This document shows positions 2,660 to 62,548 of a DNA stretch of 64,000 bases, piece after piece. The translations under genes were made by a program, and so were the position numbers. The notes beneath the pieces were generated by a model. The model was not told the origin of the DNA and made no database searches. It saw only the letters and a list, made by a program, of their open reading frames with translations. This stretch comes from Octopus sinensis. Taxonomy: Eukaryota. Location: assembly GCF_006345805.1 (NCBI RefSeq), contig NC_043005.1, positions 55,056,001-55,120,000 on the forward strand. The letters are read 5' to 3'. Every line of letters begins with the position of its first letter. The stretch's first letter is position 1.

Positions 2660-4160
2660 AAAGTTATTCAAACACTAGTGTGAATACGTTGGTGTCTAAT
2701 GATTAGCATCACCGTACTAATAAGAATTTCTATGAATGTATATTTTTGCGTACATTTATATACACATATTCAAAAGAGGAGACTGTTGCTGTGCTAAATG
2801 TGAGTTTGTAAAGTAATTGACCAAATGATGAAAGTGATAAAGTCACACCTGATATAAAGTTACTATGTTTAAATTTATATTATGACCAAGCAATACAATT
2901 ATTTCATTACAACAACAATAGAAGAGACAAGCACACTTCTTTCTATCACTCATTTTGTGATATTTGGTTTGGAATTGTGTTGCAAGTTTTATGGTATATA
3001 AGTTGGAAAGTTCTACTGTCATCAGAAAAACGGTATGTTCAAGAGCCACTTTACTTACAGGTCGCCTGCATTTTCACTTAGGTACAAAGTTATTCAAACA
3101 CTAGTGTGAATATGTTGGTGTCTAATGATTAGCATCACCGTACTAATAAGAATTTCTATAAATGTATATTTCGTGTACATTTATATACACATATTCAAAA
3201 GAAGAGACTGTTGCTGTGCTAATTGTGAGAATGTAAAGTAATTGACCAAATGATGAAAGTGATAAAGTCACACCTGATATAAAGTTACTATGTTTAAATT
3301 TATATTATGACCAAGCAATACAATTATTTCATTACAACAACAATAGAAGAGACAAGCACACTTCTTTCTATCACTCATTTTGTGATATTTGGTTTGGAAT
3401 TGTGTTGCAAGTTTTATGGTATATAAAGTTGGAAAGTTCTACTGTCATCAGAAAAACGGTATGTTCAAGAGCCACTTTACTTACAGGTCGCCTGCATTTT
3501 CACTTAGGTACAAAGTTATTCAAACACTAGTGTGAATATGTTGGTGTCTAATGATTAGCATCACCGTACTAATAAGAATTTCTATAAATGTATATTTCGT
3601 GTACATTTATATACACATATTCAAAAGAAGAGACTGTTGCTGTGCTAATTGTGAGAATGTAAAGTAATTGACCAAATGATGAAAGTGATAAAGTCACACC
3701 TGATATAAAGTTACTATGTTTAACCCTTTTGATACCAACCCGGCCAAAACCGCCTCTGGCTCTGTAGAACAAATGTTTTGTTTTCATAAGTATTGAATTA
3801 AAATCTTCCACCAAACCTTAGCCACAATTTATGTTCCCAACACTAGCTTAATGATAACTAAGTTCTTTTATTAAATTCTTTGTTGTATTTAAAATTAATT
3901 GAATGAAACACAGAGAATCTCAAAATAAATACAGTAACAAAAGGGTTAAATTTATATTATGACCAAGCAATACAATTATTTCATTACAACAACAAACCAA
4001 GAGACAAGCACACTTCTTTCTATCACTCATTTTGTGATATTTGGTTTGGAATTGTGTTGCAAGTTTGATGGTATATAAAGTTGGATTGTTCTACCATCAT
4101 CAGAAAAACGGTATGTTTAAGAGCCACTTTACTTACTGCTCGCCTGCATTTTTACTAAGT
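2660..4160. repeat. Three-copy tandem array, 426-bp period; third copy interrupted by a MITE
   Basis: The motif aaagttattcaaacactagtgtg starts at 2660, 3086 and 3512. Copies align along their length, and copy 3 resumes after the MITE at 3946. Confidence 0.95.
3724..3945 (+). mobile_element. piggyBac-type MITE, family 1 (~220 bp)
   Basis: TTAA at 3720-3723 and 3946-3949; termini ccctttt...aaaaggg. Sister repeat copies carry the empty site atgtTTAAatttat. Confidence 0.92.
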
Positions 4161-4494
4161 ACTTCTAGACAGGGTGTTTCATTTGGTGAAAGCACTACTA
4201 AGTTAACATCACTGCAGGGTTATTGAAATGAAGACATGAGATCATGCCTTAATATTCAGGCATGATTGAAAATTTACACCAACCTCTCTATACTACCTTA
4301 TAGTTTGTTTTATGGTGAGGACCACCTTGGTAAACAATATCTAACTAGAGAAAATAACCTGCATTTGAAGATTTGTACAATTAGGCACTGACATTGAAAT
4401 TACATAAAGTTTTCAGGAAAATTTTTGATGGCTTTTGTGCTGAATGGAATCTCTAGTGGTATGGGCATGTAATTAAAACATATTAGTTTCAAAT

Positions 4495-4698: not shown

Positions 4699-6399
4699 TA
4701 GCTAAAACATTAAAAAATTAAAAGTCATTAATTGCTTGTATGGCTGTTATGGTCAAAGGCACAGGATAAATCAGGTGAATGGGAAAACTTTGTGTGACAT
4801 GAAATTTCTTTATATATTGACCAGATGTCACCATCACCATCCAATGCTTCCAAATCATCCTACTCCCCTAATTGCAACTGTAGATCTTGGTCTTGTGTGA
4901 AGAGCAACTTTGCTAATTTTGGAGCAGTCATTGTATTTGGCCGATGATTTGTCTATTGTGATATTTCCATGTTTAGTAATACATTTCTTTCTTTCTTTCA
5001 TCATGCTTAGTTTTAGTTATAATAATAATAATAATAGCATAGTTACTTATTATCTATGATGCATGCTTTCATGTGCAATACCACACACACAATGATGATG
5101 ACTCTTGTGAAGTCGCCCCACCCTCCACTTTATTTATTAATTTATTTGCATTTATGTCATTCTTCAATTGTAAAGAAGACTTTTAATTTCATTAACGTTA
5201 CAGAACAAATCATGACTTCAGAGATAACTCCAAAAAAGGTGACCCCCACTTTTCACCTAGTCGATAATAAATTAAACATTCTAATATTAAGTACATGGTA
5301 TTTATGCACCCTTCCCATAATATCTTGATACTTGTTCTCTGACGCTGATGATTAGACTTCATTCCAAAGTCCAGTTCCATATGTACACCTATTGCTACCA
5401 TCATGATTAAATCATGGTCATTTTCTCTAATGATCCTTTTGCTCCTTAACTTGAGCATTTCTCAAAGGGATGTTACCTTTCTAACCTGTTTTTGTCTTAT
5501 AAATCTCAATATTGAATTGATTGCACTCTTTTCCACATACACACCATTTATCTCTTTATTTCTTATCTTCTTTTCATTAAACCTTTACACACTTCTGTAC
5601 TGTGTAACTGTCATAAATACATGAAAACATTTGACAGGACATAACAAAAGGCCCATATTATTCAACCCCAGGAACCTATACATGAACAGCTATACAGCAT
5701 CATAAACCTTATGCGTGTGAAATACAACTGTTCATAAGGATCACCTTTGGAAACTCCAGACTCACAACATATTCTAAAAGCTGCACTGAGAGGATTGGGT
5801 TTCCCTTACTGAGCCAAAATGCATTTTAATTCTGGCAAATCTATCCATAATCAATGCCTATAAATGTGAGATTATACAGCCAGCAAGTCACTTGATAACT
5901 TTTTCCTGGCTCTAATGCAATGTTATCTATCTCCTTGGTAAACTGGCTCCAGCCCCTGCCTTGCTGTTAAGCAAAGTTCCTGTTTCCTATTCAACAAATT
6001 ACTACTGTAACTTTCTCTTCACTTTAATGTACTCATTACAGCCATCGTTGGAACTCTCTCATTACCCAATCTCTTAAATTTTACTGTAAACCCCTACCGT
6101 TCCATTAGATATTAAACCTGCCACAAACCAAATAACATAAGCAATAATTCTTCAAATTTCACAGTTATTGTCCCAGGCTAACCCCTCAGAACTAAAGTGC
6201 CTCATGCCTCTTACAGTAAGTTAATCAGAAATAAGTGAAAAGCAGACAATTTTGCAAACGAATCCGTCCCTTAATGAATAACAAAATGCTTGTCTAATAT
6301 TTAGTATAACTCAGAAGATTGTGAAATATATTAACAGAAGATATGTCGGCTATGTGATTAGTTATTCTGATGTGTATACTTTTTTACTTATAGATTTAA

Positions 6400-6620
6400 C
6401 CCTTTTGTTACCAGCCCGGCTGAAACCGGCTCTGGGTCTGTAGTACAAACGTCATGTTTTCATAAGTTTTGAATTAAAATCTTCCACCAAACCTTAGTCA
6501 TAATTTATGTTCCTAACACTGGCTTAATGATAATCAAGTTATTTTACTAAATTCCTTGTTATATTTAAAGTAATTGAAAGAAACACAGAGCATCTCAAAA
6601 TAAATACAGTAATGAAAGGG
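6400..6620 (+). mobile_element. piggyBac-type MITE, family 1
   Basis: TTAA at 6396-6399 and 6621-6624; cccttttgttac...gtaatgaaaggg termini; internal similarity to 3724-3945. Confidence 0.92.
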
Positions 6621-6661
6621 TTAAGTTCTTATTTGTAGTGTTCAAAACATTAGGTTATTGT

Positions 6662-6805: not shown

Positions 6806-7680
6806 GTGCGAATTTATTTCAAGAAATATTTCCATGAAGGAAAAACAAATTTAATGGAAAATAGTTGTAAAATAGCTCTTTATTGTCTTCGATTTGAGTA
6901 TATGACTCTATTCTGTCTGAATATGCAATATATTTAAAGAACACAACATTTTCAGCAATTTGAATTGGGAGTTTAGTATAGGAAATTAATTTGAGTTTTA
7001 ATTATTACTGCTATTATTATTATTATTATTATTATAACTAAAACTAAGCATGATGAAAGAAAGAAAAAAATGCAGTACTAAAACCAATGCATTTAATGCT
7101 TTTATATAATTTTAATGTTTGTTTTTTTTTTTCTTTGTCTACCTTTAATATTTTAGGCAATAAATTAATTTGAATACTAAAAATGACAATGGAAAAAAAT
7201 ATTTACATTTATTGTGATCAGTAGCAAAATAGAATCTTTGAAAACTTATACAAAATCCAAATATCTTTATATAAATCTCAGAGAATCTGAAACTTGTCAA
7301 GTTGATTGAAAAAGAATAGTTTTGAAAGTGATACAGAAGTGTATGCTGCTGCAGAAATTCTCATGTTCACAAGCTATGAAAACGTAAATGTGAATAAGGA
7401 TGCTTGTAGATATGAATTGATGAAATATTGTGAAAAGTTTTCTTAACTACTTTGTGACCATATCTATAAAGTGTGCATTTAAGTTGATTTTGAAATTAAT
7501 CAAAAATTTGGAAGGATTTTGTAAAATAAGTTTTATCATTGTTAAACTGGCATTTGAAACCTAAACTTAGGCCCTTAAATAAAATCATGATGAGATATTT
7601 TAATTCACATATGATTACTTCATTTAGCTAATGGTTTTGTCTTATAAACTAAATTAGATTTGGGTTACTATCAGCATTAA

Positions 7681-7894
7681 CCCTTTCGTTACCAACCCAG
7701 CTGAAACTGGTTCTGAATACAAGTGTCTTATTTTCATAAGTTTTCAATTAAAATCTTCCACCAAAACTTAGTCCCAATTTATGTTCCTAACGTTAGCTTA
7801 ATGATAACTAAGTTATTTTACTAAATTCTTTCTCATATTTAAAGTAACTGAAAGAAACACAGAACATCTCAAAATAAATACAGTAACGAAAGGG
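7681..7894 (+). mobile_element. piggyBac-type MITE, family 1
   Basis: Perfect 12-bp TIR ccctttcgttac/gtaacgaaaggg; TTAA at 7677-7680 and 7895-7898. Confidence 0.93.
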
Positions 7895-8084
7895 TTAATA
7901 TGGGTGTTAAAATACTGTATTGTATTCATTACATATAGCACAACCTTGGGAAAAACCCGAAACTTAAAAACTTTCACTACCTGCTGAAAAATTTACTTCA
8001 AAGGGGGTCCATTCAAAAATACTAAAAAAAAAGGTTGTGACTACCAGTTTATTGAATTGCCAAGCTTCATAAATATATATGATA

Positions 8085-11502: not shown

Positions 11503-12969
11503 TATACATTGAAGCTGTTTTCAATTTCACTGCCACCCCATGCATTATTATAACCACTGTCTGCTGATATATTTTATTCCTACTTCTGGACTCTTAAAAA
11601 GAAGATACTAATACTTAGCGAGTGTGCTACTAAGTAAATTAAACATTCTAACCTTGTATATCTTCTTTGAGGAATTCATACCCACACACTAATTATGTCT
11701 TAGTTTGAGGAAATCTCTCAGTTTTTTTTTTACAGTGGAATTTTCTTCTTGTTTTTAGCCTATGTCTCAAGTCTGTTATTTGTAAATTTGATAATCTTGT
11801 CACATCTCAAAGCCTTGTTAGTGTTGAGGAGCTGTGTACTTTATTATACTTCCTTCTTAAAGAACATTACCCCCAAAAATCAGACCTGGCCCCACAAATC
11901 CAGCCGGCATTGCTCATTTCTTCAGTTTTACCATCTCCTTTCTAAATAAATCTCAAAGACATATGTAGCATAGTGTAATGCGACAATTCATAGTAGTTGA
12001 TATTACTTTATGCATATGTAGTGCAATAGAATTTGCAGATTTACCAGTTTGATAGTATTTCCAATTCTACTTAGTTTAAATTCATAAAGTCATTATTACT
12101 TTTTAGGATATAAAACTTGGATTTTAGAAAGTAGGGTCAAGGTTTCGAGCCTAAGCATAACTTTATAAACTGAAAGGAACTTCACCTATTTTTTTCCCCC
12201 TTAAAATCAATAAAACGTTTGGTTTGGTTTGGTAACATTAGTAGTTTATGTGATTGCTGTGGCTGGCAGTTGTGTACCAAATTATACACTCAGAAAACTA
12301 AAAAAGGGGTACGGTACTAGATATTGAAATGAAGGTGAATCTAGTTAAAGGAGGTGTGTGCATCTTAGTTTGTTAGATATGGAAAATACCTTAGATAAAG
12401 TTGTTGTTTTTTTTAAAATTCAGCCAATATTCTCAACCAGCTTAAATCAAAATTCTTTTATTTTTTTGGTTTTTATTCTTTTGAAATAGGGACTGGTTAT
12501 ACTGGAACCCCAGTTTCAAGGGTTTTAGTTGACTGTGTCTAATGCTTTGTTTTTTTATACAAGTTAACTAAAACAGTATCCGGGAAAAATTCTCACATGC
12601 AAGTACACAGACACACACACACACAAAACTGTGTTATACCTAGAAATGTTACTTTCTGTTTTTGAAAATTTAAATCTGCATGAGAATAGTAGCAGCAGTA
12701 TGCTTAATGCAGACCATTGTATTCACTTATAATCTATATTTTCTGTCTGCTGTTATTCAAGTCGATTGCTGATCTGCAATCAATGCTATCATCATGACTG
12801 CACATTTACTGCATAGACAAGAGCAGTGGCACGGCATACATTCTCTACCGACAGACAACAAAAATATATTCCATTAAACTACACAGTATCTTACACAATG
12901 AAATAGGAAAAAATGAGGGAAAAGAATTTAAACTTCGATATTTTTCTTCTTTTATTTTCTTGTTCTTAC

Positions 12970-13090
12970 CTGTGTTCTCTTAGTGAAACCTATGCAATAT
13001 TGACTGTGAACATAGGAATTCATCGTATTTCTTCCAGTATGTTATCTTACATAGATTGCGGAGCATCGAAACATATAAATATAAAATCCA
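12970..13090 (-). other. Putative 121-nt exon of a minus-strand transcript (copy 1)
   Basis: On the minus strand: T-rich tract-ttctcaag| acceptor and acacag|gtaaga donor. All frames from the acceptor contain a stop; an internal ATG gives MNSYVHSQYCIGFTKRTQ up to the donor. Confidence 0.5.
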
Positions 13091-13694
13091 CTTGAGAAAA
13101 GGAAAAAAAAAAAAAAGAAGAAAATATCTGGTATTATATCCACTTACAACCTTTCTAATAGTTTTACTCCACCATTTTTACAAAAATTATAGTAATAAGA
13201 TTTAGATAAGAAAATATAGCCATCTTCAATGAAATTAAAACAAACAAAATTTACTGTAAATCCTTGTTTTTTTTCTTTTTTCTTTTTTTTTTCTATCTCT
13301 CTCTCTTAAAGTTGTAAAGTTTGGCCTTGCAACCACATCCTTTCATTGTAAGCATATTTCCCCAGATACCCAACATAAGACGATAGTGTTTCTGAACTAA
13401 AAAAAAAAAAAAAAAAAAAATTACTTTTTTTTTTTTTTCAATTGCTTTTAATGAAAGATATCATTAGTTTTCAGCTGCTTGTCAAACAGATATTCCTCTG
13501 TACTGTACCTTTTTCTTTCTTTCTGTCTTTCTTTTTTTTTTTTTTGGCTTATTTGTTGTTGTTGTTGTTTCTTGTTGCTGTTGCAGTTGTTGTTGTGCAT
13601 ATCTGTTAGTCATCCAAGTTAGCTTGGCTGTTGCTGGTGTTAAATAAAGAAAGTGGTTATTATTATTTTTTTCTTCTTTTTTTCTTGTTCTTAC

Positions 13695-13815
13695 CTGTGT
13701 TCTCTTAGTGAAACCTATGCAATATTGACTGTGAACATAGGAATTCATCGTATTTCTTCCAGTATGTTATCTTACATAGATTGCGGAGCATCGAAACATA
13801 TAAATATAAAATCCA
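13695..13815 (-). other. Putative 121-nt exon of a minus-strand transcript (copy 2)
   Basis: Same sequence and splice signals as 12970-13090. Confidence 0.5.
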
Positions 13816-14472
13816 CTTGAGAAAAGGAAAAAAAAAAAAAAGAAGAAAATATCTGGTATTATATCCACTTACAACCTTTCTAATAGTTTTACTCCACCAT
13901 TTTTACAAAAATTATAGTAATAAGATTTAGATAAGAAAATATAGCCATCTTCAATGAAATTAAAACAAACAAAATTTACTGTAAATCCTTGTTTTTTTTC
14001 TTTTTTCTTTTTTTTTTCTATCTCTCTCTCTTAAAGTTGTAAAGTTTGGCCTTGCAACCACATCCTTTCATTGTAAGCATATTTCCCCAGATACCCAACA
14101 TAAGACGATAGTGTTTCTGAACTAAAAAAAAAAAAAAAAAAAAAATTACTTTTTTTTTTTTTTCAATTGCTTTTAATGAAAGATATCATTAGTTTTCAGC
14201 TGCTTGTCAAACAGATATTCCTCTGTACTGTACCTTTTTCTTTCTTTCTGTCTTTCTTTTTTTTTTTTTTGGCTTATTTGTTGTTGTTGTTGTTTCTTGT
14301 TGCTGTTGCAGTTGTTGTTGTGCATATCTGTTAGTCATCCAAGTTAGCTTGGCTGTTGCTGGTGTTAAATAAAGAAAGTGGTTATTATTATTTTTTTCTT
14401 CTTTTTTTTTTTTTCTTTGTCAGTGGACTTTTTGCAAATGTATTATGGTATGAATTGAGGGAGGTACCTTAC

Positions 14473-14899: not shown

Positions 14900-15184
14900 A
14901 CTTCTCACACACTCCCAGATATTTCCCCTCCCTCCAAATAGGGAGTCATGGGAAGAGCTTATTGGCTCCACTTAGTGTTGTTGGACTCATCTTTGGTTCA
15001 CCTGCTGCTGCTGCTGCTGCTGTTGTTGTTAGTATTCACTAGGACTGTAACACCGTACTCCACCCCTGCTATCTCTAGCCATGTCTGAAGAGTGTATTTG
15101 AAAATCATTCTGTGCCTGGTGACCGGCAGGTAGGCAGGTGATGGTGCCTCTTAGTTCCAGATGTTGACCACGGTGCCGAGTGAG
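14900..15184 (+). other. Putative first (leader) exon of a long plus-strand gene (5' limit uncertain)
   Basis: Ends in a consensus donor GAG|GTAAGT. GC-rich, with a (CTG)n tract and ATGs at 14948, 15081, 15141 and 15161. Confidence 0.6.
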
Positions 15185-15577
15185 GTAAGTTTTCGAGGAA
15201 ACTCCCTTGTTACGATCAAACACACACACACACAAATACATTCACAGAATCCCTATAATGTACGCGTGCACTCTCAGATATATATATATATGTACACATA
15301 ATATATACTCACGGGATTGCTAGCTAATACGGTCTTTCATTCATACGGCGTCTGGTTCTCTGAACATCGTTCATATTTCATAGACGCCTCGTTTGTAAGA
15401 TTTGTACAAAATACATGTATAATGCATACACTCATTTTCGCTATCATATATAGATATTCGATTTTACAGCATTACAAATTTTTTTAGGATTATTGATGGT
15501 CTGTTTCAAGTGATGGAAAGAAAAAGAAAAGTGTCTTTACGCTGCTTTATTTCCAACTTAGTATGATCATTGTAATA

Positions 15578-15638
15578 TCTATCTTTCTATCTATCTATCT
15601 ATCTGTCTATCTATCTATCTATCTATCTATCTATATGT

Positions 15639-15670
<32 letters not shown>

Positions 15671-15674
15671 ATGT

Positions 15675-15706
<32 letters not shown>

Positions 15707-15741
15707 ATGTTTATCTATCTATCTATCTATCTGTCTATCTA

Positions 15742-15772
<31 letters not shown>
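15578..15772. repeat. (TATC)n microsatellite with a 36-bp higher-order unit
   Basis: The tatgtt interruption recurs three times at 36-bp spacing. Confidence 0.92.
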
Positions 15773-16339
15773 CATTACCTCCGATCAGATATAAATGTAT
15801 GTATGTGTTTAATCAAACTAATGCCAGTTACGTTTCTATATCACATTAGATCTCTGAATAAAAGAATCCAATTTGCTTTATTTTTTAAATTTATTTATTT
15901 ATTTATTCATTTATTTTAAGTACTATCTTAGCTCTCGTCGTCGGGCATTTTCAGATTTTTATAGTACCAGCTTCGTTCGACAGATAAAAGAAGCCAATGT
16001 CAAGATATTATACCCGAAATAACCATCTATGAATTAAATAAGTGAATGCTTTGAATGTATGTAATATAATTTTAGCGGATCGTGTAATTGTGCTGACGGC
16101 TGTCGTCGTTATCGGAGGGTTATCTCCCTTACTTAAAAGGCAGGTCGACATGGAAGCTTGCGAGCATAAATCATACAGAATTATTATTATTACACTTCAA
16201 TAAAACTTGCTGGAGAGATTTTTTTTTTATATCATATATCTATCTTCCATGTAGACATTCTGCTGTACATATTGATTTATATTTTTTTTCACTAGCGTTT
16301 CAGCATTCTACGTCTTATTATTTTTTTTCACTTTGACAG

Positions 16340-16390
16340 GTTCACATCAATGTATCTATTCTTAGTTACCTTTATAATACACACACACAG
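16340..16390 (+). other. Putative 51-nt cassette exon
   Basis: ttttttttcactttgacag| acceptor and cag|gtaatt donor; open in phase 0 (VHINVSILSYLYNTHTQ). Confidence 0.35.
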
Positions 16391-17096
16391 GTAATTTCTA
16401 TCGGTGGGTGGTGGTCATGTTATTTCGTTTCTTCTTTCTCCTCATCGACAGAGCAGTGGCAGTTATTGAACTGTCATTATAAGTTTGCTTTCTTTCTTTC
16501 TTTTTTTCTTCCTTTCTGCGCATTTATTTTATACGCTTTTTTTTCCTTCTTTCTCTTCGTTTTGTTCTCGTTGTTCCTTCATCATTTAGTTAGGCGTTCA
16601 CTTTCAATTTTCATTACAAAGTGAGCTGCACATGTTCAACTTGGGATCTAACCTTGTTTTCTTCGTTTTACGTCGTCGTATTCGTCCCCGTTGGACATTC
16701 CATCAGACACTATCTCATTAATAAAAACAGAAAAATTCATGGACATACATACACACACGCGCGTGCATATATACATACATATACATATATATATGTGAGT
16801 CTGTGTTTGTTAGACGAACATATAATAATACTATTGTGACTTACGTCTTATTGATTTAGCTCGTCTTTTATTTAGGAATCTGCATGTAATCTGCTAACTG
16901 ATTAAATTGTTAGGTTACGTTCATGACAGTTGATTGCAATACGTGTGTACCTGTAGGTGCGTGCGTAGAGGAAGACACAGACAGAATGAAAGAAAGAAAA
17001 AGAAAAGGTGGGTGGTGGGGGCGGGAGTTTGATTAGCGTCGATGATGATTTCTCTTTGAATTCTTCTACGTGAAGTCAGTCAATTAGTCTTTTACC

Positions 17097-17133
<37 letters not shown>

Positions 17134-18799
17134 GATAGTGATTCCATTCCATTATCGTCTCGGCTTTATCAATGTATATAGACTACGCACACACGTACAT
17201 GGGTCTCTCTCTCTGTTCGATAACCGATCGAGTGAAAGAATTCCAACTTTTTTTTTTTTAATGCATGTGTGTGTGTGTTAGATTTATGAATTTCTCGTCG
17301 GGAAAAACGAATAAACATAACCTTTAATGAATGTAGTTAGATTTTTCGTTTTGTTTTTCCCACCCCACTAAGGTAAAAGAAATATATCCAAACATGTAAA
17401 AGACTTTAGTCATTTAATTAGAAACTACTACTTGGTGTTTCTTTGAACTATTTTCAATAGTCTTTTTTTTTCTCTTTGAAATGTTATCATTCACACATTT
17501 CTACTTTAAAACACTTATTTGATTAGACAAATCACAATATTATAGACATTTAAAAAAAATCATTTCTAGTAGCGTTGTTACGTTGATTTCCAACTTTGCA
17601 TTCTTTTCTTCAAATCTTATAGTCATTTATATAAGTTGAGGAGTTTTGCAATGGAATAATTTAGTATTTGTTGTAAAAAAGTTATTAGATAACAAAGAAA
17701 TAAGAATGTGTGCGTCATGTATTTCATTTTAACTTATTCATCATGTTACTCGAAACTAAAATTGGAAGAAAAAAAAAGAAAAAGAAATTGTGACGGAAAA
17801 AATAATAAATCTTTTAACTTGATCAAATGGTAAAAATATTCATAGAAATATCTGTGCTTGGGATCCAGTTTCATTTTTATTTCTATGATATTTGATTTAA
17901 AATAATTTAAATTAATTGCAGCAACTTTAATAATTTTGCATGTTTTATGAAAGAAATATTTTAATTCCTTGATATTAAGATTTAAAAAAATTTTTAAATA
18001 CTTCTGGAATTACATATTTTTTTATCTTTCAACTAATTAGCAAACTTTTATATATAACCATGTAACTGCAGATCTTTTAAGCTTTAATCTATTTAGAATC
18101 TTTGCAAAAGTATCTATGGACATAAATTCTATCTTTTTCTATAAAATTTAATTTGCTGTAACTATTTTTTAAATTGATATTAAATTAACTTGAACTAAAA
18201 ATATCAGTTTAATGGCTTCAATAATAATTTCTTTAGTTCAGGTTTATTCTTCCAGAGTTGTGACTTAAATGAAACAATATTGAAAATGTTTAATGGGAGA
18301 CGCCAATACTAAAAGCCACATGTTTCTAACTTCAATAGAAGCTATCAATTCTACGCACCACTACCTATGTCTATGTAACTAAGAGATAAAACACAGTTGA
18401 TTGACTGCTTATCAAGGTGATAAGATGATAATCCAAAACCGGAGATACATGTCATTATGTAGAATCAAATGAATTTTTGAAATGAATGACTTCAGGTGAA
18501 ATTCAGTGACATTCTTATCTTTCTCCGATTTCTTTCAAACACTGCATTTATGGGGCTTTCTTTGTGTTTCATTAGACATTAGGTGTTTTATTTTTATCCT
18601 TTTCATAAATTCTTTTTAAGTAATTCAATTTTGGATATGTCCCAGGTTTTATATTGCTTAGACTAAAGTAGTGATACATGTTGGTAGAATGTTTCTGAAT
18701 CTTTGAAATAGTACTAACTACTTAAACATAGGCTCTTTATTGTGATTATTGTTTTTGCAACTTATGCATAACTTTTATAGTTCTGTATTAAATTGTTTC

Positions 18800-18888
18800 T
18801 CAATTCTCATTGATATATACCTTTTCTTGTATTTCTAGGTAAGCACTGTTTTTCTATAACAATAAAAGCAAAAGCCAAGTGAGTAAGT
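18800..18888 (+). other. Candidate recursive splice site 1 with RS-exon
   Basis: ccttttcttgtatttcTAG|GTAAGC at 18838/18839; downstream overlapping donors GTGAGTAAGT at 18879 and 18883. Confidence 0.55.
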
Positions 18889-20519
18889 TACACCATGAAA
18901 ATTTTTTTATATATATATATATATAAATATTAACAATTTTTCTATTTTTCAACTTCGAAATGAGGGTTGAAATAAAACTGAAAAAAGAATATACTTCAAA
19001 CCTGAATTGCCTATACTTTGTACAACGAATACAGGAAAGTACATTTACTTTCACTTTAGTATTGGTTAGAGTATTTCCCTAAATATTTTGGAAAAGTTAA
19101 AGAAATGTTCAGAAGTATTTCTGCAATTTGATATTCTGTATTACTAGCATATCAAACTATGAATCTGCAGTTTCCTTCATTTCTGTTAGAATCTGTTAGT
19201 AAAAGGAATGAATTTAGTGTCAAACTCATACATTTTTTTCAAAGTAGATTTATTTAAACAGTTACAAAATATTCAATTCTCATAAAAAAGATTATAATAA
19301 ATGTTAATATTAATAATAGCTTTATGTTAACTAAGAGCACTTTTCCCCTATTCCTTGAAAAACAATTTTATTGTAGTAAGAAATTCTAAAATTAAAATTA
19401 ATTTTTTCATAAAACATTTTTTTAAAGTTCTGAGTTTCAGATTTCAAGCTTTTGATTATTGTTTTTCTTTTTTTTTCCAAAAGTTCTTTTGATTAGTTTT
19501 CTTTGAACTCGTATTTCAAATGTCAATTTTATTTATTTCTTAATTTTATACTTTCCATTTGGAAATTTAAATCGAGAAGCATTGTTTCCTCGCTAGTTGT
19601 TCTTACTCATCTATCGCTCACTTGAAAAAATTGCTCTAGGTCATACTTGAGAGATAAGAAAATTTTGAAATGTTCCACTTAAATATAAATATGTGTTTCT
19701 GGAGAACGTTGGTTTCATTTTCTACTCATGGAAAAAAAAAAGAAGAAAAAAAAGGAAAAAAAAAGATAAAAAGAAAGAAGAAAATGAGAGAAAATGTTGG
19801 CTCTTAACATTCCCTTATGTTTTCAAGTTAGCTTAAGAGGTTTTGCAAGAATATGTGTAATTCTGTGTTTTAACAAAAGCAACAAGTGTTGTATGCTGAG
19901 ACTTTCTGTTCCCCATATTAATAGGAATTGTTTTCTTCTCTTTTTTAAAGTCTAAAACGGTTTAAATAAATCTGTACATTTATGCATTAACATTTAACGT
20001 AAGGTTACTTGTTTTTCTTTCTCAACTCATTGAATATTTCTTACTCCATCTATTTTCTCCTCTTTTTTTATTTTATCTATAAAATATCTATATTCAATAC
20101 AAAGATTCCCGTTTGCTACATTATCTTAAGCATTTCATTCGACTCTTTTGTGTTCCTATAAATTTTATGCTAACTTTAAAATGGGAATTATAAAGAATTC
20201 CACCAGAACCTAATGTTGCTAACTTCTATTGTTTTGCAACAAATCTTATTTGTACTTTTTCAAAAAATAAGTATACAGTTAAGTTTAGTTTTCAATCGGT
20301 TTTGTTTTAATTTATATATGTTTTTAATAATGTTGGGTGAGGTATAAATATCACACTCTCTGATTCACCTTTTTCTATGAAATTAAAATTTTATAAATGT
20401 TTAAAGAAATCCTCATTATTATGAAATTACTCACTTTGAGGGCTTATTTCCTTAGGAGTTTGTTGATTTGTAGAGATGTTGCTATTAAATTAGAAGCAAT
20501 TATTATTATTACTATTATT

Positions 20520-22335
20520 ATAAATGTGGTGAGCTGGCAGAATTGTTAGCACGCCAGGCAAAATGCTTAGTATTTTACATTTCTTTATATTCTGAGTTCA
20601 AATTCTGCCAAGGTTGACTTAGCCTTTCATCCTTCTTGGGTTGATAAATTAAGTACCTGTCAAGTACTGGGGTCCATGCGATTGACTTACTCCCACCCAG
20701 CAAATTTCAGGTCTTTTGCCTATAGTAGGAAGGGTTATTATTGTTATTAAGTATTATCATTATTCTTGTTAAGGCAGCAAGCTGGCAGAATTGGTAACAC
20801 ACGAGGTAAAATGCTTAAGTGGCATTTCATCTGGCTTTGCATTCTGAGTTCAAATTCTGTTGAGGTCAACTTTACCTTTCATCATTTTGGGCTCGATAAA
20901 ATAAATACCAGTTGTTGTAATCTACTAATCCCCTCTTCAAAATTACTGGCCTTATGCCAAAATTTGAAACCATTATTGTTATCATTATTAAGGTGGTGAC
21001 TTGGCAGAATTGTTTGTGGAATTTTTTTTCTGGCTCTTTACCTTCTGAGTTCAAATCTTACTAAGGTCGACTTTGCCTTTCGTTTTTCACTTTCGATAAA
21101 ATAACCACCAGCCACATACTGGAGTTGATTTCATCAACTAATTCTCCACTTCTTTAAAACTGCTGCCTTGTACCGAAATTCGAAAGAATTATTTATTATA
21201 AAGGCAGTGTGTGCTGGCAGAATTGTTAGCATGTCTGACAAAACGCTTAGCAGCATCTGTTTCGATCCTTTATGTTCCAAGTTCATTCTTTCGGGCTTAA
21301 GTACTCGGGTTGATGTAACCAACTCGATATCTTCCTTCAACATTACTGGCTGTGTACTGAAATTAGGAAGAATTATCGTTATTATGATTGATTAAGGCAA
21401 CTAACTGGCAGAATCGTTAGCATGCTGGGCAAAATGCCCAGTGACATTTCTTCTTGCTTTGCATTCTGAGTTCAAATTGCACTGCTTTCAATTTTACCTG
21501 TAACCTTTTCTGGGTCAATAAGTACCAGTTGAGCACTGGAGTTGATATAATTAACTAGACCCTTCCCCAACTTAATTTCAGGCCTTGTGCCTAGAGTAGA
21601 AAGAATTATTATTATTATTTCTATGGCAGTGAACTACTTGTAGAATCTTTCAGCATGGTAAAAGTGCTCCTGTAGCCCTTGATACTGCTGGCTTTGTGCT
21701 TCAATTGGAAACCATTATTATTATTAAGACGGCAAGCTGGCTGAATAATTAGCATGTCCATCTTTATGTTCTGAATTCAAATTCTGCCGAGGTCAAATAT
21801 AGAATTATATCAACTTTGCTTTTCATCCTTTTGGGAACAATTAAATAAATACAGGTTACACACTGGGATCAATGTAATCAACTTAATCCCTTCTTTCTAA
21901 TTTGAGGCCTTGTGCTTCCAGTAAAAAAGAATTAATTACTATTATTATTATTAAGATGGCAAGTTGGCCGAATCATTAGCATATCTGTTCTGAATTCAAA
22001 TTCCGCTGAGGTCGACTTTGCTTTTCCTCCTTTTGGGGTTGATAAAGTAAGTACCAGTGAAACACTGGGGTTGATGTAATTGACTAGTCCCCTCCCCAAA
22101 ATTCTCAGGCCTTTAGTAGAAAGGAATATTATTATTTGAAGTAGGAGACTAGTAGAATTGGAGTGTTGCAAAAAAAGCCACTTGGTTTTCTGATTTCAAA
22201 TTCTGCCAAAGTCATCTTTGCCTTCCTTCATTTTGGCATTGGTAAAATAAAGTATGATACAAGTACTGGCATTGACTAACCCCACCTTCCAAAAATTGCT
22301 GGCCTTGTGCTTAAATTAGAAACGATTATTATTAT
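20520..22335 (+). mobile_element. Head-to-tail array of ~9 family A SINE copies
   Basis: Units start near 20524, 20770, 20990, 21200, 21393, 21623 (partial), 21725, 21950 and 22138. All have the same orientation and most are separated by ATT-rich tails. Confidence 0.88.
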
Positions 22336-24535: not shown

Positions 24536-25527
24536 GAAAATGAGAATCGTTATAGATTGCTTATATAAATAGTAGTAAATGTAGTTGTTTGGTTTTTTTA
24601 TTTTTATATCAGTGAGGAATGAATAAAATACAAGAATGTTGCCAGTATGTCCTAGTTTAATTCTGTAATTTTCACCTTTCCCAATTATCTAAAAAGCGTT
24701 TATTTCATAAAATGTCTTTTTTGTCATGTTTAGTGTTTAATCTGATACACTTTAAAAAAATTTTCTAACCTATTTTGGCGATCTTAATTCTATTTATTAC
24801 CAACTAATTTTAATTTTATTCTATCTTACCACTTCATTTAATGCAAAATCATGCTTCTAACATAATTTCATTTCGGTTTTTTTCTTTCTTTTTGTAATTC
24901 TGTTTGTTTATTATTCATTATCATTTTTTTTTTTTTCTAATTTTTCATACACGATAAAACTTTTTGTTTGCATTAGGTTTTCTTAGCATCAAAGTATTTC
25001 TCTATGAGTATGTGGACTTCTGAGTTTTTTTTAATTATCACAGAAATAAATGAGAGGGGAGGGAGGCAGAGAGAAAGAGATTAGTGGCTAATTTGCCACA
25101 TGACTGCGTTAACCAAGTAGACCTACAACCATCAAAGATATACCAGTCATAACCATCCCCGCATTTTTTTCTTTTTTTTTGTTAGATGTCTAGGTGTATC
25201 TTCAAATACATTATCTAATGTATATTTCGCTTTCTCTAGATGTTAGGAAGCTATTTGGAAGTGATTTGCCTTGCTATTTCTTGCACGCCAAGCATATTTT
25301 GTATATGAGGTGACAAGGCATAATGAATATATACAAGTGTGTTGAGAACCAGTGTACAGAATAAGATGTGTGTGTGTGATAAACTTTAAAACTATTTTTC
25401 ATCGAGACACACGGCATTTTCAGATAATGTGGTACCTCATACAATTGATTCTTTACTGAATATATAACCCTCATATGAGCAACATAAGTCTCTTTATCAT
25501 GTTGGTTAAATAATCCCATCACTTTAA

Positions 25528-25747
25528 CCCTTTCATTACTGTATTTATTTTGAGATGCTCTGTGTTTCTTTTAATTACTTTAAATATAACAAAGAATTTA
25601 GTAAAATAACTTAGTTATCATTAAGCTAGTGTTAGGAACATAAATTGTGACTATGGTTTTGTGGAAGATTTTAATTCAAAACTTATGAAAACAGGACATT
25701 TGTACTCAGAGCCAGAGTGGGTTTCAGCCGGGTTGGTATCAAAAGGG
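25528..25747 (-). mobile_element. piggyBac-type MITE, family 1, inverted orientation
   Basis: TTAA at 25524-25527 and 25748-25751; interior is the reverse complement of 6400-6620. Confidence 0.92.
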
Positions 25748-26439
25748 TTAATGAAATACTTAGTTACTTTCCAAATTCATATCAGCTACTTGTTACCAAC
25801 ATTCTCTTATTCTTTTCCATTGGTTTTCATTCATATTGTTCTTAAAGGAAAATCTACTCTTTATACATGTGCATGCTTGCTTCTGCATGCATTTATGTAC
25901 CACACACACAGACACAAACACATTTATTTATAGTGCGAGAATGAAAGAATATATATGACTGTCTTTGTGGCGGGTGTAATCCATGACAATTGTCGGTCTC
26001 TCTCTGTCTGCCTGTCTATCTATCTATCTATCCATCTATCTATCCATCCATCCATCCGTTTGTGTGCGTGTGTGAGAGTAAGCACGCACGTGCACATCTA
26101 TAAATATGTTTAAGGTACTCACGCAGGCCAGGCATGCATTGCTAGCGGTTCGCACACACAGACACGGCATATATAAATATAAGGGACTGAGATACGTTCT
26201 TCTCACTTCTCTTATCTTGTTAATCATGCGAATGCATAGGGTCCTTTTGAACTCCTGCTTTGTATTTTAGCCTTTACTGAATTCATTATGCTTTCATAAG
26301 CAGTCCCTTTTTTCTTCCTAATTGAACTCAATGCCAGTACTATGCATAGTCCTCCTATAGGTGGGACAATAAGATAGTGTAACCCCCATGCACGTGCATG
26401 GGCACGCAAACAAGCACATACTTTTATAATTATGCGTAT

Positions 26440-29849: not shown

Positions 29850-30050
29850 AAATGAGCTGCGACGTCACAGGTGCCAAGCTGTATCGACCTTTGCCTTTCC
29901 CTAGGATAACATCGGTGGCGTGGAGGGGGTAGGCTGGTATGCGTGGACGGCTGCTGGTCTTCCATAAACAACCTTGCCCAGACTTGACTTGTACCTCGGA
30001 GGGTAGCTTTCTGGGTGCAATCCCATGGTCATTCATGACTGAAGGGGGTT
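29850..30050 (+). mobile_element. 3' half of SINE family D
   Basis: Aligns with 33705-33902 (gcgacgtcacaggtgccaagct...catgaccgaaggggg). Confidence 0.85.
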
Positions 30051-30122
30051 CACAAAAATATATGTGTATATATATATATTAATATATATATATATATGTG
30101 TGTACATGTATGTATATATATG

Positions 30123-30157
<35 letters not shown>

Positions 30158-30169
30158 GTATATATATAT

Positions 30170-30200
<31 letters not shown>

Positions 30201-30512
30201 GTATATATATAATATATATATAATATATATATAGATATATATTTGTTGAAATAGAAAGATGAATTTTCTTGTTACAGATTATTCAAAAGTTTAACCGATA
30301 CCTGGGTAGCAAAATCACAGCAGAAATCACTGCGCCTCTGTTTTGTTTTGTTCTGTCAACGAATTCCTGTTTTTTCCTGAAGAGAAAGCCACAATATGGT
30401 ACCCTTATTTAATCAGAATTTGGAATTTGTAGCCTTTGAACATGTGTAGAATGTAATAAAAGGAATTCTGTACAATCTTCGTTCAACTCCATTTCTTCCA
30501 TTCACTAATAAG

Positions 30513-30547
<35 letters not shown>

Positions 30548-30646
30548 ATATAAGGCATTGTGGTAATCAGTTTCCTTCCCGAAGGCATGACGTTATTCCA
30601 CTATGTGGCAGCTTAGACGACAGTCTTTAACTGTTTTTTGCATGTG

Positions 30647-30677
<31 letters not shown>

Positions 30678-30940
30678 CATATAGAAATATGCATGTGTAT
30701 ATGTATATTGATATACATATATGTATATTTCTATATGTGTGTATGTGTGTATATATTTGTGTGTATGTATATATATATTTGTATATGTATATGTGTGTAC
30801 ATATGTATATATATATGCATGTATATATATATATGCATATATATATGTATAAATATATGTATTTGTATGTATATGTATATATTTATTTGTATGTATATAT
30901 GTATGCATATATCTATGTACATATGTATATATATGCACAT

Positions 30941-31083
30941 ATCATCATCATCATCGTTTAACGTCCGCTTTCCATGCTAGCATGGGTTGGACGGTTCAAC
31001 TGGGGTCTGGCAAGCCCGAAGGCTGCACCAGGCCAGTCAGATCTGGCAGTGTTTCTACAGCTGGATGCCCTTCCTAACGCCAA
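30941..31083 (-). mobile_element. 5'-truncated retroposon, family E, with (GAT)n tail
   Basis: Reverse complement reads ggcgttaggaagggcatccagc...catgctagcatggaaagcggacgttaaacgat(gat)n. Related fragments occur at 29350, 41730, 42261, 42645, 47220 and 55990. Confidence 0.8.
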
Positions 31084-31253
31084 TATATACATATGTATAT
31101 CTATATATGTATATATTTGTATATATATATGTATATATGTATGAACATATATATATATATATATTTGTATAAATATATATTTATATATATATATCTGTAG
31201 GCATATATGTATGTATATATTTGTATACATATATCTGTAGGCATATAAGTATG

Positions 31254-31311
<58 letters not shown>

Positions 31312-32282
31312 TGTATGTATGTATATATGTATGTATGTATAATATGTATGTGTATATATGTATGTATGTATATATATATAATGTATGTTATAGTATGTAT
31401 GTATATATGTATGTATAATATATATATGTATGTATATCTGTATGTATATATATATATGTATGTATATATATATGTATGTATATATATATGTATGTATATA
31501 TATATGTATGTATATATGTATATATATGTATGTATATATATGTATATATATGTATGTATATATATATGTATGTATATATATATATGTATATATATATGTA
31601 TATATATATATATATATGCATATATATATGTATACATATGTATATGTATATATATGTGTGTATGTATATTATATATGTGTGTATGTATATATATATGTAT
31701 GTATATAAATATGTGTGTATGTATATATGTATGTATATATATATGTGTGTGTATATATATATGTGTATACATATATGTATATATGTGTATGTATATATAT
31801 ATGTGTATGTATATATATGTATGTATATATATATATGTATCTATGTGTATGTATATATATATATGTGTGTGTGTATATATATATGTGTATACATATATAT
31901 ATATATGTATATATGTGTATGTATATATATGTATATATGTGTATGTATATATATGTATATATGTGTATGTATATATATGTATATATATGTATGTATATAT
32001 ATATATATATGTATCTATGTGTATGTCTATATATGTATATATATATATGTATGTATATATACATGTATATATATGTATGTATATATACATGTATCTATAT
32101 GTATGTATATATATATGTATATATATGTATATATTATGTATATATATAGGTATGTATATATATATGTATTATTATATATGTTATATATGTATGTATATAT
32201 ATATGTTATATATATGTATGTATATATATATGTATATATATGGTATGTAGTATATATAATGTATATAGTATATATATGTATG

Positions 32283-32322
<40 letters not shown>

Positions 32323-32720
32323 TGGTATGTATATATATGTATGTATATATATGTATGTTATATAATATGTATGTATATCTATATATGTATATATATGTAT
32401 GTATGTATATATATATGTATGTATATATATATATGTTATGTATATATATATATGTATATATAGTATGTATATATATAATATGTATATATATATATGTATA
32501 TATATATGTATGTATATAATATGTATGTATATATGTATGTATGTATAGTATATATATATATGTATGTATACGTATATATATATGTATTATATATATATAT
32601 GTATGTATACGTATATATATTGTATATATATATATCTGTATGTATCTATATATGGTATATATATGTATGGTATATAGTATGTATGTTTATATATAATGTA
32701 TGTGTATATATATGTATGTG

Positions 32721-32756
<36 letters not shown>

Positions 32757-33500
32757 GATGTATATATAGGTAAATGTATATTATCTATATGTGTATATAT
32801 ATTGTATGTGTATATATATGTATGTGTTATATATGTATGTATATATATATGTATATATATGTATTATATATATATGTATATTATATGTATGTATATATAT
32901 ATGTATATAGATGTATATATATGTTATATATATATGATCTATTATATGTATAATATATAATATATATATGTATATGTATGTATTATTATATGTATGTATA
33001 TATATATATATATGTATATGTATGTATATTACTATGTATTATATGTATGTATATATATATGTATGTATATATATATGTATGTATATGTATGTATGTATAT
33101 ATATATATGTATTTATATATATATATGTATATATATATGTAATATATATATGTCTATATATGTATGTATATGTATGTATGTATATGTATGTATGTATAGA
33201 TATATATGTATGTATATATATATATGTATATATATGTATGTATATATATATATGTATATATATGTATGTCTATATATATATGTATATGTTGTATGTATAT
33301 GTATGTATGTATGTATTATGTATATGTATGTATATATATATGTATGTATATCTATGTATGTTATATGTATGTATATATATATATGTATGTATATTATGTA
33401 TCTATATATGTATGTATATATATGCATGTATGTATTTATATATATTATGTATGTATATATGCATGTATGTATTTATATATATATATGTATATGCATGTAT

Positions 33501-33557
<57 letters not shown>

Positions 33558-33568
33558 TATATGTATGT

Positions 33569-33902
33569 GAAGGCTCATGTCACTGTGGTTAGAGTGTCAA
33601 GCATATGATCACAAAGTTAGGAGTTTGAAGCCCGGACCAGGCTACATGTTGTGCTCTTGAGCAAGTCACTTATTTCACGTTGCTCCAGTTCACTCAGCTG
33701 TGGAAATGAGTTGCGACGTCACAGGTGCCAAGCTATATCGCCGTTTGCCTTTCCCTTGGATAACACTGGTGTCATGGAGAGGGAAGGCTGTTATGCACGG
33801 GCGACTTCTGGTCTTCCATAAACTACCTTGCCTCGACTTGTGCCTGGGAGGGTAACTTTCAAGGTGCCATCCCACGGTTAGTCATGACCGAAGGGGGTCT
33901 CC
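33569..33902 (+). mobile_element. tRNA-derived SINE, family D (near full length)
   Basis: gtggttagagtgtc head, ggagtttgaagccc B-box-like motif, CORE-like cttgagcaagtcactt, and 3' half shared with 29850-30050. Confidence 0.82.
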
Positions 33903-33949
33903 GCATATATATGTGTATATGTATATGTCTTGATACATGTGTGTATCCC

Positions 33950-34135
33950 TGTCAATAAGAAACTATGACATTACAACCAGCCAGGAAAAGTTTTCTCTAC
34001 ATTTGCGGCACCTGCCAGACGGAGTGTTTCTCCAGGATAGGACTACACAGCCACAGCATGAATTGTAAAAGCCGGACTAGATTATTTTATGGGCAACTCC
34101 ATTGTCTCCAGAGACAAAAAGGATGCCAGCAACAT
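33950..34135 (+). mobile_element. 3' end of an RTE-clade LINE
   Basis: Translation FLYICGTCQTECFSRIGLHSHSMNC matches the CxxCxRxCxSRIGLxSH C-terminal motif of RTE-clade ORF2 and is followed by a short 3' UTR-like tail. Confidence 0.85.
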
Positions 34136-37100: not shown

Positions 37101-37246
37101 ATATATTTATATAAGCATATAAATATGTATATATATAATTGTATGTATACATATGTTAGTATTCCTGTTTATATATATGTTTGTATACGTATGTGTATAT
37201 ATATATATATATATTTATATGTATATGTTTGCATATATCCGTTGAA

Positions 37247-37575: not shown

Positions 37576-37820
37576 TCATGTCATGTGTGTATATATATAT
37601 ATATTTATACATATAAATATATGTATGTATATGTATATCTGTATATATATATGTATTTATATATATGAGTAGATGTGTGTGTATATCTTTATACATACAT
37701 ATATATATATATGTGTGTGTGTAAATATATATATATATATATAAATTTAAAGTGAGCGTGAGAAATAGTGGATCTGTTTCTAGCATAAGGGTGTCCACAT
37801 AATGGTTTCTCTCTAATATG

Positions 37821-62414: not shown

Positions 62415-62548
62415 TATCTTACTTTAATTTTTTTTTTTTTTTTTTTTTCTTTAGGTAAGTCGAGAACTTTTCAAGATTCATAGCTTAAATGGATTACGTA
62501 ACTTCTCAAAATGTTTTGTTTTGGAGATCATGCCTTGTGAAGGTAAGG
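62415..62548 (+). other. Candidate recursive splice site 2 with 88-nt RS-exon (62455-62542)
   Basis: ttaat-T-tract-cttTAG|GTAAGT at 62454/62455; downstream donor GAAG|GTAAGG at 62543. Confidence 0.6.

What the first reader, a model, noticed from the sequence alone, without database searches (positions are those of the whole stretch)
18800..18888. Candidate recursive splice site 1 with a stop-containing RS-exon
Seen: a branch-like ctcat, a pyrimidine tract, then TAG immediately followed by GTAAGC, so splicing from the upstream exon would regenerate a 5' splice site. Overlapping donors GTGAGTAAGT lie 40/44 nt downstream, and the intervening segment has a TAA in phase 0. Established: AG|GT ratchet points backed by a cryptic downstream donor (RS-exons) subdivide very long introns in Drosophila and vertebrate neural genes. 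Inference: with the second site at 62454, the long plus-strand intron may be removed stepwise. I am not aware of a description of this in cephalopods or molluscs. Caveat: AGGTAAG alone is expected a few times by chance in 64 kb of AT-rich DNA; the added tract and downstream donor are what make it notable.
Basis: partly seen in the sequence, partly recalled or inferred. Interest (0 to 1): 0.72.

Follow-up and report, generated by a model that had tools for sequence, protein, structure and literature searches.

The report
Unproven recursive-splice-like motif in octopus intron
The sequence really does look like a "recursive splice site" inside a long octopus intron, but a look-alike this good is expected by chance in roughly one in 10-20 introns of this size. 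Nothing available here (no RNA data, no related genomes) shows that the cell uses it.

Summary

AGGTAAG alone is at chance (7 found, 6.06 expected). As a composite 3'ss|5'ss, the site scores z=2.7 among the window's AG|GT sites, so 0.31 equally good sites are expected in this intron. Adding the downstream donor gives P about 0.05-0.09 per intron (0.003-0.005 with post-hoc thresholds).

The intron shows no sense-strand excess of weaker AG|GT composites. The site would also cut it into 3.65 kb + 43.6 kb, unlike the 9-15 kb segments in flies.

The partner site at 62455 (T21-CTTTAG|GTAAGT, donor at +88) is not chance (P about 0.0025). It is probably a real exon or RS-exon edge, which raises the prior somewhat.

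The repeats match Octopus bimaculoides proteins, so the taxon guess holds. No cephalopod DNA or RNA could be reached, so conservation and use are untested.

Verdict: chance pseudo-exon about 0.5, true ratchet point about 0.3, ordinary small cassette exon about 0.12. If real, it is a new member of a known kind. Interest is low to moderate.

The parts
18806..18814 (+). Branch-point-like CTCAT (A at 18809) overlapping TTGAT (A at 18813), 29 and 25 nt upstream of the AG
   Evidence: Read directly. Both fit yUnAy. No AG dinucleotide lies between them and 18837.
18820..18836 (+). Pyrimidine tract ccttttcttgtatttct (15 of 17 Y), with TT at -5/-6
   Evidence: Acceptor PWM score 10.4 bits. 32 acceptors on the + strand of the window score 10 or more.
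18837..18844 (+). AG|GTAAGC: juxtaposed 3' splice site and regenerated 5' splice site (candidate ratchet point; junction between 18838 and 18839)
   Evidence: Donor score 9.9 bits. Composite score 20.3, z=2.72 among real AG|GT sites.
18839..18878 (+). 40-nt candidate cryptic RS-exon (44 nt if the donor at 18883 is used). It has stops in two of three frames and contains AATAAA at 18861-18866.
   Evidence: The length is not a multiple of 3. AATAAA is at chance density (179 found, 175 expected).
18879..18888 (+). Overlapping downstream donors CAA|GTGAGT (18879) and TGA|GTAAGT (18883)
   Evidence: Best downstream donor 9.7 bits at +40. Only 6 donors this strong lie on the sense strand of the intron.
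14942..15184 (+). Exon-like unit upstream: acceptor ccctccaaatag|GGAGTC, donors at 15130, 15138 and 15185 (GAG|GTAAGT). It is GC-richer than its surroundings and is the presumed upstream exon.
   Evidence: Not verified by any transcript or protein match.
62428..62542 (+). Partner site: T21-C-TTTAG|GTAAGT (junction 62454|62455), with donor GAAG|GTAAGG 88 nt downstream. It is an exon-like unit or RS-exon.
   Evidence: Three-part score 36.4, P(max at least this) = 0.0025 in shuffles. One open frame of 29 codons, but no protein homologue.

Best explanation
Most likely this is a fortuitous pseudo-exon. In AT- and T-rich intronic DNA, a decent 3' splice-site look-alike happens to be followed by GTAAGC and, 40 nt later, by another donor-like GTGAGTAAGT. 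On this reading it is not under selection. The spliceosome ignores it or uses it only at noise level. The long intron is removed without an obligatory stop here.

Shown: the motif alone is at chance; the intron has no sense-strand enrichment; the site sits near the 5' end of the intron.

Inferred: that it is not used.
For: - AGGTAAG: 7 found against 6.06 expected; 4 on the + strand and 3 on the - strand.
- Composite score z=2.72, so 0.31 sites this good are expected among the 95 AGGT of the sense intron.
- P(max composite at least as high) = 0.31-0.38 in local dinucleotide shuffles.
- Even with the downstream donor, P = 0.05-0.09 per 47-kb intron. A multi-gigabase, intron-rich genome should therefore hold hundreds or more of these by chance (my extrapolation).
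- Sense against antisense AG|GT composites in the intron: 24/24, 11/15, 8/10 and 3/5 at thresholds 8-14.
- No other candidate lies in the remaining 43.6 kb.
- Segment sizes of 3.65 and 43.6 kb differ from the 9-15 kb chunks of fly recursive introns (PMC6110457).
- The regenerated donor is not stronger than its competitor (9.9 vs 9.7 bits).
- Stops in a 40-nt stretch of 31%-GC DNA are expected anyway.
Against: - The full three-part anatomy is uncommon: 0.0025-0.005 sites per intron if all three observed thresholds are required, and 0.05-0.09 by summed score.
- It is the single outlier among sense-intron sites (20.3 against a next best of 15.3). No antisense site exceeds 16.1.
- Strong donors are scarce on the sense strand (6 against 16 antisense), yet two of them sit here 40 nt apart.
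- A second, much stronger site of the same design lies on the same strand (62455). Two sites scoring 30.0 or more have P = 0.0013.
- TT at -5/-6, which 99.5% of fly ratchet points have, is present.
Confidence: 0.5

Rival explanations
1. It is a true recursive splice site (ratchet point) with a cryptic 40/44-nt RS-exon. The segment 18839-18878 is recognised by exon definition through the downstream donor. The upstream exon is then spliced to 18839, which regenerates ..G|GTAAGC. That donor is used for the next step, so the RS-exon is discarded. If the donor at 18879 or 18883 wins instead, a frame-breaking, stop-containing exon is included and the mRNA is degraded or unproductive.
For: All sequence-level features of published ratchet points are present:
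- AG|GT on the presumed sense strand of an intron of at least 47 kb;
- pyrimidine tract with TT at -5/-6;
- a branch point and an AG-free zone;
- a short, out-of-frame RS-exon of about 50 nt with its own donor (PMC8605326).

The three-part anatomy has P 0.05-0.09, or 0.003-0.005 by thresholds.

The partner site at 62455 has a textbook ratchet-point sequence and is not chance (P 0.0025).

Sense-strand enrichment of ratchet-point motifs has been reported in the long introns of every invertebrate examined, namely insects and sea urchin (PMC2773006).
Against: - No RNA or conservation evidence could be obtained.
- The motif alone is at chance.
- The intron has no sense-strand excess.
- The position, 7.7% into the intron, gives almost no subdivision.
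- There is no further site in the next 43.6 kb.
- The regenerated donor is no stronger than the competing donor, whereas skipping of fly RS-exons follows donor strength.
- The gene model around the site (exon ends, strand) is itself unverified.
Confidence: 0.3
2. It is an ordinary small alternative exon of 40 or 44 nt, either a 5'-UTR exon or a poison exon, that merely happens to begin with GTAAGC. It is included or skipped as a cassette, and the regenerated donor plays no part.
For: - It ranks among the few distinct exon-like acceptor-donor pairs on the + strand (20 pairs on + against 5 on -).
- The upstream exon-like region carries only short upstream ORFs, and no protein match was found. 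This part of the gene may therefore be 5' UTR, where small alternative exons are tolerated.
Against: - Exons starting with a strong donor are rare among real exons (general knowledge; annotated RS-exons are a small minority, PMC6224609).
- 40 nt is short for unaided exon definition.
- No transcript or protein evidence was found.
Confidence: 0.12
3. It is a composite terminal exon, that is, a cryptic intronic polyadenylation site. The 3' splice site at 18838 plus AATAAA at 18861-18866 would give a truncated transcript. The GTGAGTAAGT just downstream binds U1 and normally suppresses cleavage.
For: - AATAAA lies 23 nt after the acceptor, and the two U1-type sites lie 13-17 nt after it.
Against: - AATAAA is at chance density in the window (179 found against 175 expected).
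- A terminal exon of about 45 nt would be unusually short.
- No GU-rich downstream element stands out, apart from the donors and a (TA)n run.
Confidence: 0.03

Closest known systems
Drosophila intronic ratchet points with cryptic RS-exons (Duff 2015, bioRxiv 10.1101/006163; Pai 2018, PMC6110457; Joseph and Lai 2021, PMC8605326)
   Same: - Juxtaposed 3'ss|5'ss AG|GTAAG in a very long intron.
- Strong pyrimidine tract with TT at -5/-6.
- Short (about 50 nt), out-of-frame, stop-containing RS-exon with its own downstream donor.
   Different: - Fly sites are ultraconserved and are supported by saw-tooth coverage, junction reads and lariats. None of this is available here.
- Fly sites cut introns into segments of about 9-15 kb. 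This one would give 3.65 + 43.6 kb.
- In flies the ratchet-point donor usually beats the RS-exon donor. Here the two are about equal.
- The +6 base is C, not T.
Vertebrate RS-exons (Sibley 2015 as summarised in PMC5126111; Blazquez 2018, PMC6224609)
   Same: - The exon-definition model: the RS-exon is defined first, and then the regenerated and downstream donors compete.
- Inclusion brings in a premature stop.
- Typical hosts are long, often neural, genes.
   Different: - Host gene identity and expression are unknown here.
- Vertebrate sites were defined from brain RNA-seq and are conserved.
- Vertebrate long introns show little motif enrichment, so the motif alone has low predictive value there (PMC2773006).
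Pseudo-exons / cryptic exons of long introns (for example the DMD pseudoexon compilation, PMC7175933)
   Same: An intronic pair of decent splice-site look-alikes, with no coding potential and no repeat-family origin, which sits silent or is used as low-level noise.
   Different: A pseudo-exon that also begins with a strong donor is the rarer sub-case. That is exactly what makes this one resemble an RS-exon.

Membership tests
Recursive splice site / ratchet point with cryptic RS-exon | [quoted passage not shown] | tested here: met
   TAG|GTAAGC at 18836-18844 on the + strand. That it is intronic and on the sense strand is inferred from exon-like units at 14942-15184 and 62455-62542 and from T>A skew on the + strand. 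No transcript verifies this.
Recursive splice site / ratchet point with cryptic RS-exon | Prominent pyrimidine tract with TT at -5/-6, and a usable branch point | tested here: met
   15 of 17 Y at 18820-18836. T at 18833 and 18834. CTCAT/TTGAT 25-29 nt upstream, with no intervening AG. The fly figure of 99.5% TT is.
Recursive splice site / ratchet point with cryptic RS-exon | Short cryptic RS-exon (about 50 nt) closed by a downstream donor, out of frame or stop-containing | tested here: met
   40 or 44 nt, with donors at 18879 and 18883 and stops in 2 of 3 frames. This content is also what chance gives in 31%-GC DNA.
Recursive splice site / ratchet point with cryptic RS-exon | Regenerated (ratchet-point) donor stronger than the RS-exon donor, so that the RS-exon is skipped | tested here: inconclusive
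   9.9 against 9.7 bits with my approximate PWM. U1 complementarity is similar: 7 contiguous pairs against 6-8 interrupted ones, by inspection.
Recursive splice site / ratchet point with cryptic RS-exon | Motif occurs more often than chance / is enriched on the sense strand of long introns | tested here: not met
   - The heptamer is at chance.
- 0.31 composites this good are expected.
- Sense against antisense counts are 24/24, 11/15, 8/10 and 3/5.
- Only the full three-part anatomy is marginal (P 0.05-0.09).
Recursive splice site / ratchet point with cryptic RS-exon | Subdivides the intron into intermediate-size segments (about 9-15 kb in flies) | tested here: not met
   15185-18838 is 3.65 kb and 18839-62454 is 43.6 kb. 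No further candidate lies between them.
Recursive splice site / ratchet point with cryptic RS-exon | Evolutionary conservation of the AG|GT core against diverged flanks | not testable with these tools
   No cephalopod DNA is reachable:
- ORFs and peptides around the site have no relatives.
- The exact 23-mer is absent from the metagenome and prokaryote collections.
- The Octopus bimaculoides proteins that were found have no contigs on record.
Recursive splice site / ratchet point with cryptic RS-exon | Splicing intermediates: exon-to-site junction reads, saw-tooth intronic coverage, lariats starting at the regenerated donor | not testable with these tools
Alternative cassette / poison exon | Segment present in some mature transcripts between the flanking exons | not testable with these tools
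   No transcript data. The translated segment and its neighbours have no hits.

The most novel reading that the evidence does not exclude
18839 and 62455 are both genuine ratchet points / RS-exons of one octopus gene. This would be the first recursive splicing seen in a mollusc or any lophotrochozoan. Taken with flies and vertebrates, it would argue that RS-exon-based handling of long introns is ancestral to bilaterians and is used in the very long genes of cephalopods.
Probability: 0.3. Interest if true: 0.55.

Novelty: not a real feature. Interest (0 to 1): 0.3.

Why it matters
Cephalopod genomes are repeat-rich and have many very long introns, particularly in neural genes. How those introns are removed accurately has not been described. 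The held literature has nothing on recursive splicing in cephalopods or molluscs.

A validated site would extend a mechanism known from flies and vertebrates to a third major bilaterian branch. It would also give a handle on splicing fidelity and poison-exon control in octopus.

That would still be an expected extension of a known mechanism. This single motif does not establish it. The useful result here is the calibration: a site of this quality is expected by chance in about 1 in 10-20 introns of this length. Motif-only calls therefore need RNA or conservation support.

Tried and rejected
1. Identifying the host gene.
- The exon 1 + exon 2 peptide (MLTTVPSE + VSRELFKIHSLNGLRNFSKCFVLEIMPCE) found no homologue.
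- An exhaustive HMMER search of the 62455-62616 translation gave only three weak hits to tandem-repeat proteins (a G5-domain protein and others), judged spurious.

2. Reaching orthologous DNA.
- The 66-aa ORF beside the site is not on record.
- Ten window ORFs are not in the collection.
- A concatenated query of eight ORFs within 500 nt of the site gave no hit.
- The exact 23-mer across the junction is absent from metagenome contigs and genome contigs.
- The three repeat-derived hits, two named Octopus bimaculoides, have no contigs on record.

3. Transposon origin: rejected.
- No repeat family of the window covers 18.3-19.4 kb. Only the (TA)n run at about 18900-18930 does.

4. A structured RNA or tRNA-derived element: rejected.
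- Rfam gave 0 hits and there are no tRNAs.

5. Null models.
- Whole-intron Markov models were set aside in favour of local dinucleotide shuffles, because they mix the 10-kb microsatellite block into the composition.
- A first summed-score run was discarded because it let non-GT sites through.
- One empirical-pool run used a faulty filter and was redone.

6. An intronic poly(A) site was considered. AATAAA is at chance density.

Full report
**What is in the sequence**

- CTCAT at 18806-18810, with the A at 18809, 29 nt before the AG. It overlaps a second yUnAy match, TTGAT.
- No AG between that point and 18837.
- The tract ccttttcttgtatttct at 18820-18836 (15 of 17 pyrimidines, with T at -5 and -6).
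- TAG at 18836-18838, immediately followed by GTAAGC at 18839-18844.
- GTGAGTAAGT at 18879-18888, which gives GT dinucleotides 40 and 44 nt downstream.
- Reading from 18839 gives GTA AGC ACT GTT TTT CTA TAA.

The proposed upstream donor GAG|GTAAGT at 15184|15185 and the second site TTTAG|GTAAGT at 62454|62455 also exist.

**Context**

- The window is 31% G+C, T-rich on the + strand, and full of microsatellites and short interspersed repeats.
- One 407-bp repeat family matches repeat-derived stretches of predicted Octopus bimaculoides proteins at 82-93% identity.
- Rfam and tRNA scans found nothing.
- No repeat family covers 18.3-19.4 kb. Only a (TA)n run follows the site.
- A splice-site PWM scan was run with my own approximate generic metazoan matrices, used only for ranking. 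It finds few distinct exon-like acceptor-donor pairs on the + strand:
  - 14942-15184, which has a strong acceptor of its own and so may be an internal exon, not the first one;
  - 62455-62542;
  - the 40-nt unit at 18839-18878.
- Counting overlapping combinations, there are 20 such pairs on the + strand and 5 on the - strand.
- Neither flanking exon could be tied to a protein. The gene, the reading phase and even the exon ends remain inferred.

**Is it more than chance?**

| Test | Result |
|---|---|
| AGGTAAG, both strands | 7 found, 6.06 expected |
| YYYNYAGGTAAG | 2 found, both on + (18832, 62448), 0.38 expected; 5 of 100 shuffles reach 2 |
| Composite acceptor+donor score | 20.3 bits, z=2.72 among 313 real AG\|GT sites; 0.31 sites this good expected among the 95 AGGT of the sense intron |
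| Best composite in local dinucleotide shuffles | at least as high in 31-38% of shuffles |
| Summed score including the best donor 25-150 nt downstream | P 0.05-0.09 |
| All three observed values used as thresholds (anti-conservative) | 0.0025-0.005 sites per intron |

The site is the one outlier of the intron: the next best sense site scores 15.3 and the best antisense site in the window scores 16.1. Even so, the intron has no sense-strand excess of weaker AG|GT composites. The sense/antisense counts are 24/24, 11/15, 8/10 and 3/5 at thresholds 8-14.

The motif alone is therefore ordinary. The whole three-part arrangement is something one expects in roughly one intron of this size out of 10-20. 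By my extrapolation, that means hundreds or more chance copies in a multi-gigabase, intron-rich genome.

**Fit to the known mechanism**

Published ratchet points have these features:
- AG|GT with a strong tract, and TT at -5/-6 in 99.5% of fly sites;
- a cryptic RS-exon of about 50 nt that is poorly conserved and out of frame;
- a ratchet donor that usually beats the RS-exon donor;
- an ultraconserved core;
- support from junction reads, saw-tooth coverage and lariats;
- in flies, a position that cuts introns into 9-15 kb pieces.

Here the sequence-level features are met. Donor competition is a tie (9.9 against 9.7 bits). The position is atypical: 3.65 kb, then 43.6 kb with no further candidate. 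Conservation and RNA evidence could not be tested.

**The partner site**

The site at 62455 is a run of 21 T, then CTTTAG|GTAAGT, with GAAG|GTAAGG 88 nt downstream. It is far stronger, with a summed score of 36.4 and P about 0.0025. Two sites scoring 30.0 or more have P = 0.0013.

It is very probably a real splice element. It could be the next exon, which would then be an RS-type exon because it begins with a consensus donor, or a cryptic ratchet point in an even longer intron. Its one open frame of 29 codons is not significant in this composition, and it has no homologue.

Its presence raises the prior that this transcript uses AG|GTAAG elements. For that reason I do not put the recursive reading of 18839 lower than about 0.3.

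**Attempts to get outside evidence**

All routes to cephalopod DNA or transcripts failed:
- peptides and ORFs at and around the site have no relatives or records;
- the junction 23-mer is absent from the metagenome and prokaryote collections;
- the Octopus proteins that were found have no contigs on record.

The held literature has no account of recursive splicing in cephalopods, molluscs or other lophotrochozoans. A 2009 motif study did report sense-strand enrichment of ratchet-point motifs in the long introns of insects and sea urchin, but not of vertebrates (PMC2773006).

**Verdict**

| Reading | Probability |
|---|---|
| Chance pseudo-exon, unused or used only as splicing noise | about 0.5 |
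| True ratchet point with a 40/44-nt cryptic RS-exon | about 0.3 |
| Ordinary small alternative (UTR or poison) exon that happens to start with GTAAGC | about 0.12 |
| Cryptic intronic poly(A) exon | about 0.03 |

AATAAA, on which the poly(A) reading rests, is at chance density.

If the site is real, it is a new member of a known kind, not a new mechanism. RNA junction, lariat and saw-tooth data, together with an alignment of the octopod orthologues, would settle the question. The site at 62455 deserves the same test first.

Noticed in passing
window 62428-62547: A run of 21 T, then CTTTAG|GTAAGT, with a second AG|GTAAGG 88 nt downstream. This is a much stronger ratchet-point / RS-exon look-alike than the finding itself (P about 0.0025 in shuffles). 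It has one open 29-codon frame but no protein homologue. The GT at 62455 could alternatively close an exon-like unit at 62192-62454.
   Followed up: partly
window 15130-15190: Inside the presumed upstream exon there is another AG|GT composite (ccggcag|GTAGGC at 15130), plus CAG|GTGATG at 15138, 55 and 47 nt before the main donor at 15185. These look like alternative donors. The exon-like unit also has a strong acceptor at 14941, so it may not be a first exon.
   Followed up: partly
window 30000-40000: A block of about 10 kb of TA/TG-type micro- and minisatellite. G+C is 17-24%, with strong G-over-C skew (+0.28 to +0.45) on the + strand. It gives long spurious 'YIYIY/CMYV' ORFs on both strands. 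It sits in the middle of the presumed intron.
   Followed up: no
window 12939-14417: Tandem duplication with a period of about 725 bp, 99.3% identical. It lies immediately upstream of the GC-richer exon-like region and looks recent. Each copy carries a minus-strand exon-like pair (acceptor ...ctcaag|, donor ACAG|gtaagaac).
   Followed up: no
window 2636-4162: Tandem repeat with a period of about 428 bp. Two units are 97.9% identical and a third, partial unit is about 93% identical.
   Followed up: no
window 40697-41103, 47644-48049, 61324-61728 (+); 42063-42535, 43273-43444 (-): A 407-bp interspersed repeat family. Its translation matches internal stretches of predicted Octopus bimaculoides proteins (UniRef A0A0L8H4P3 'aromatic-L-amino-acid decarboxylase' and A0A0L8I3Y0 'FAM98A'). 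This suggests those gene models have absorbed repeat sequence.
   Followed up: partly
window 3711-3949, 6384-6624, 7675-7898, 25523-25751, 55226-55458: A SINE-like repeat family of about 230 bp (83-93% identity between copies). A second family of about 160-250 bp lies at 4537, 8304, 8588, 20500-20911, 21372 and 21986.
   Followed up: no
window 15185-62454: Strong donor look-alikes (9.66 bits or more) are rarer on the presumed sense strand (6) than on the antisense strand (16). AATAAA also looks rarer on the + strand. This could reflect selection against cryptic signals or simply the T>A skew.
   Followed up: no
window 63035-63262: An ORF fragment containing ...VNKAIKKMKMVKPLAGPLTGIV... resembles, from memory, the start of a LINE reverse-transcriptase domain. 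It was not tested against any library.
   Followed up: no
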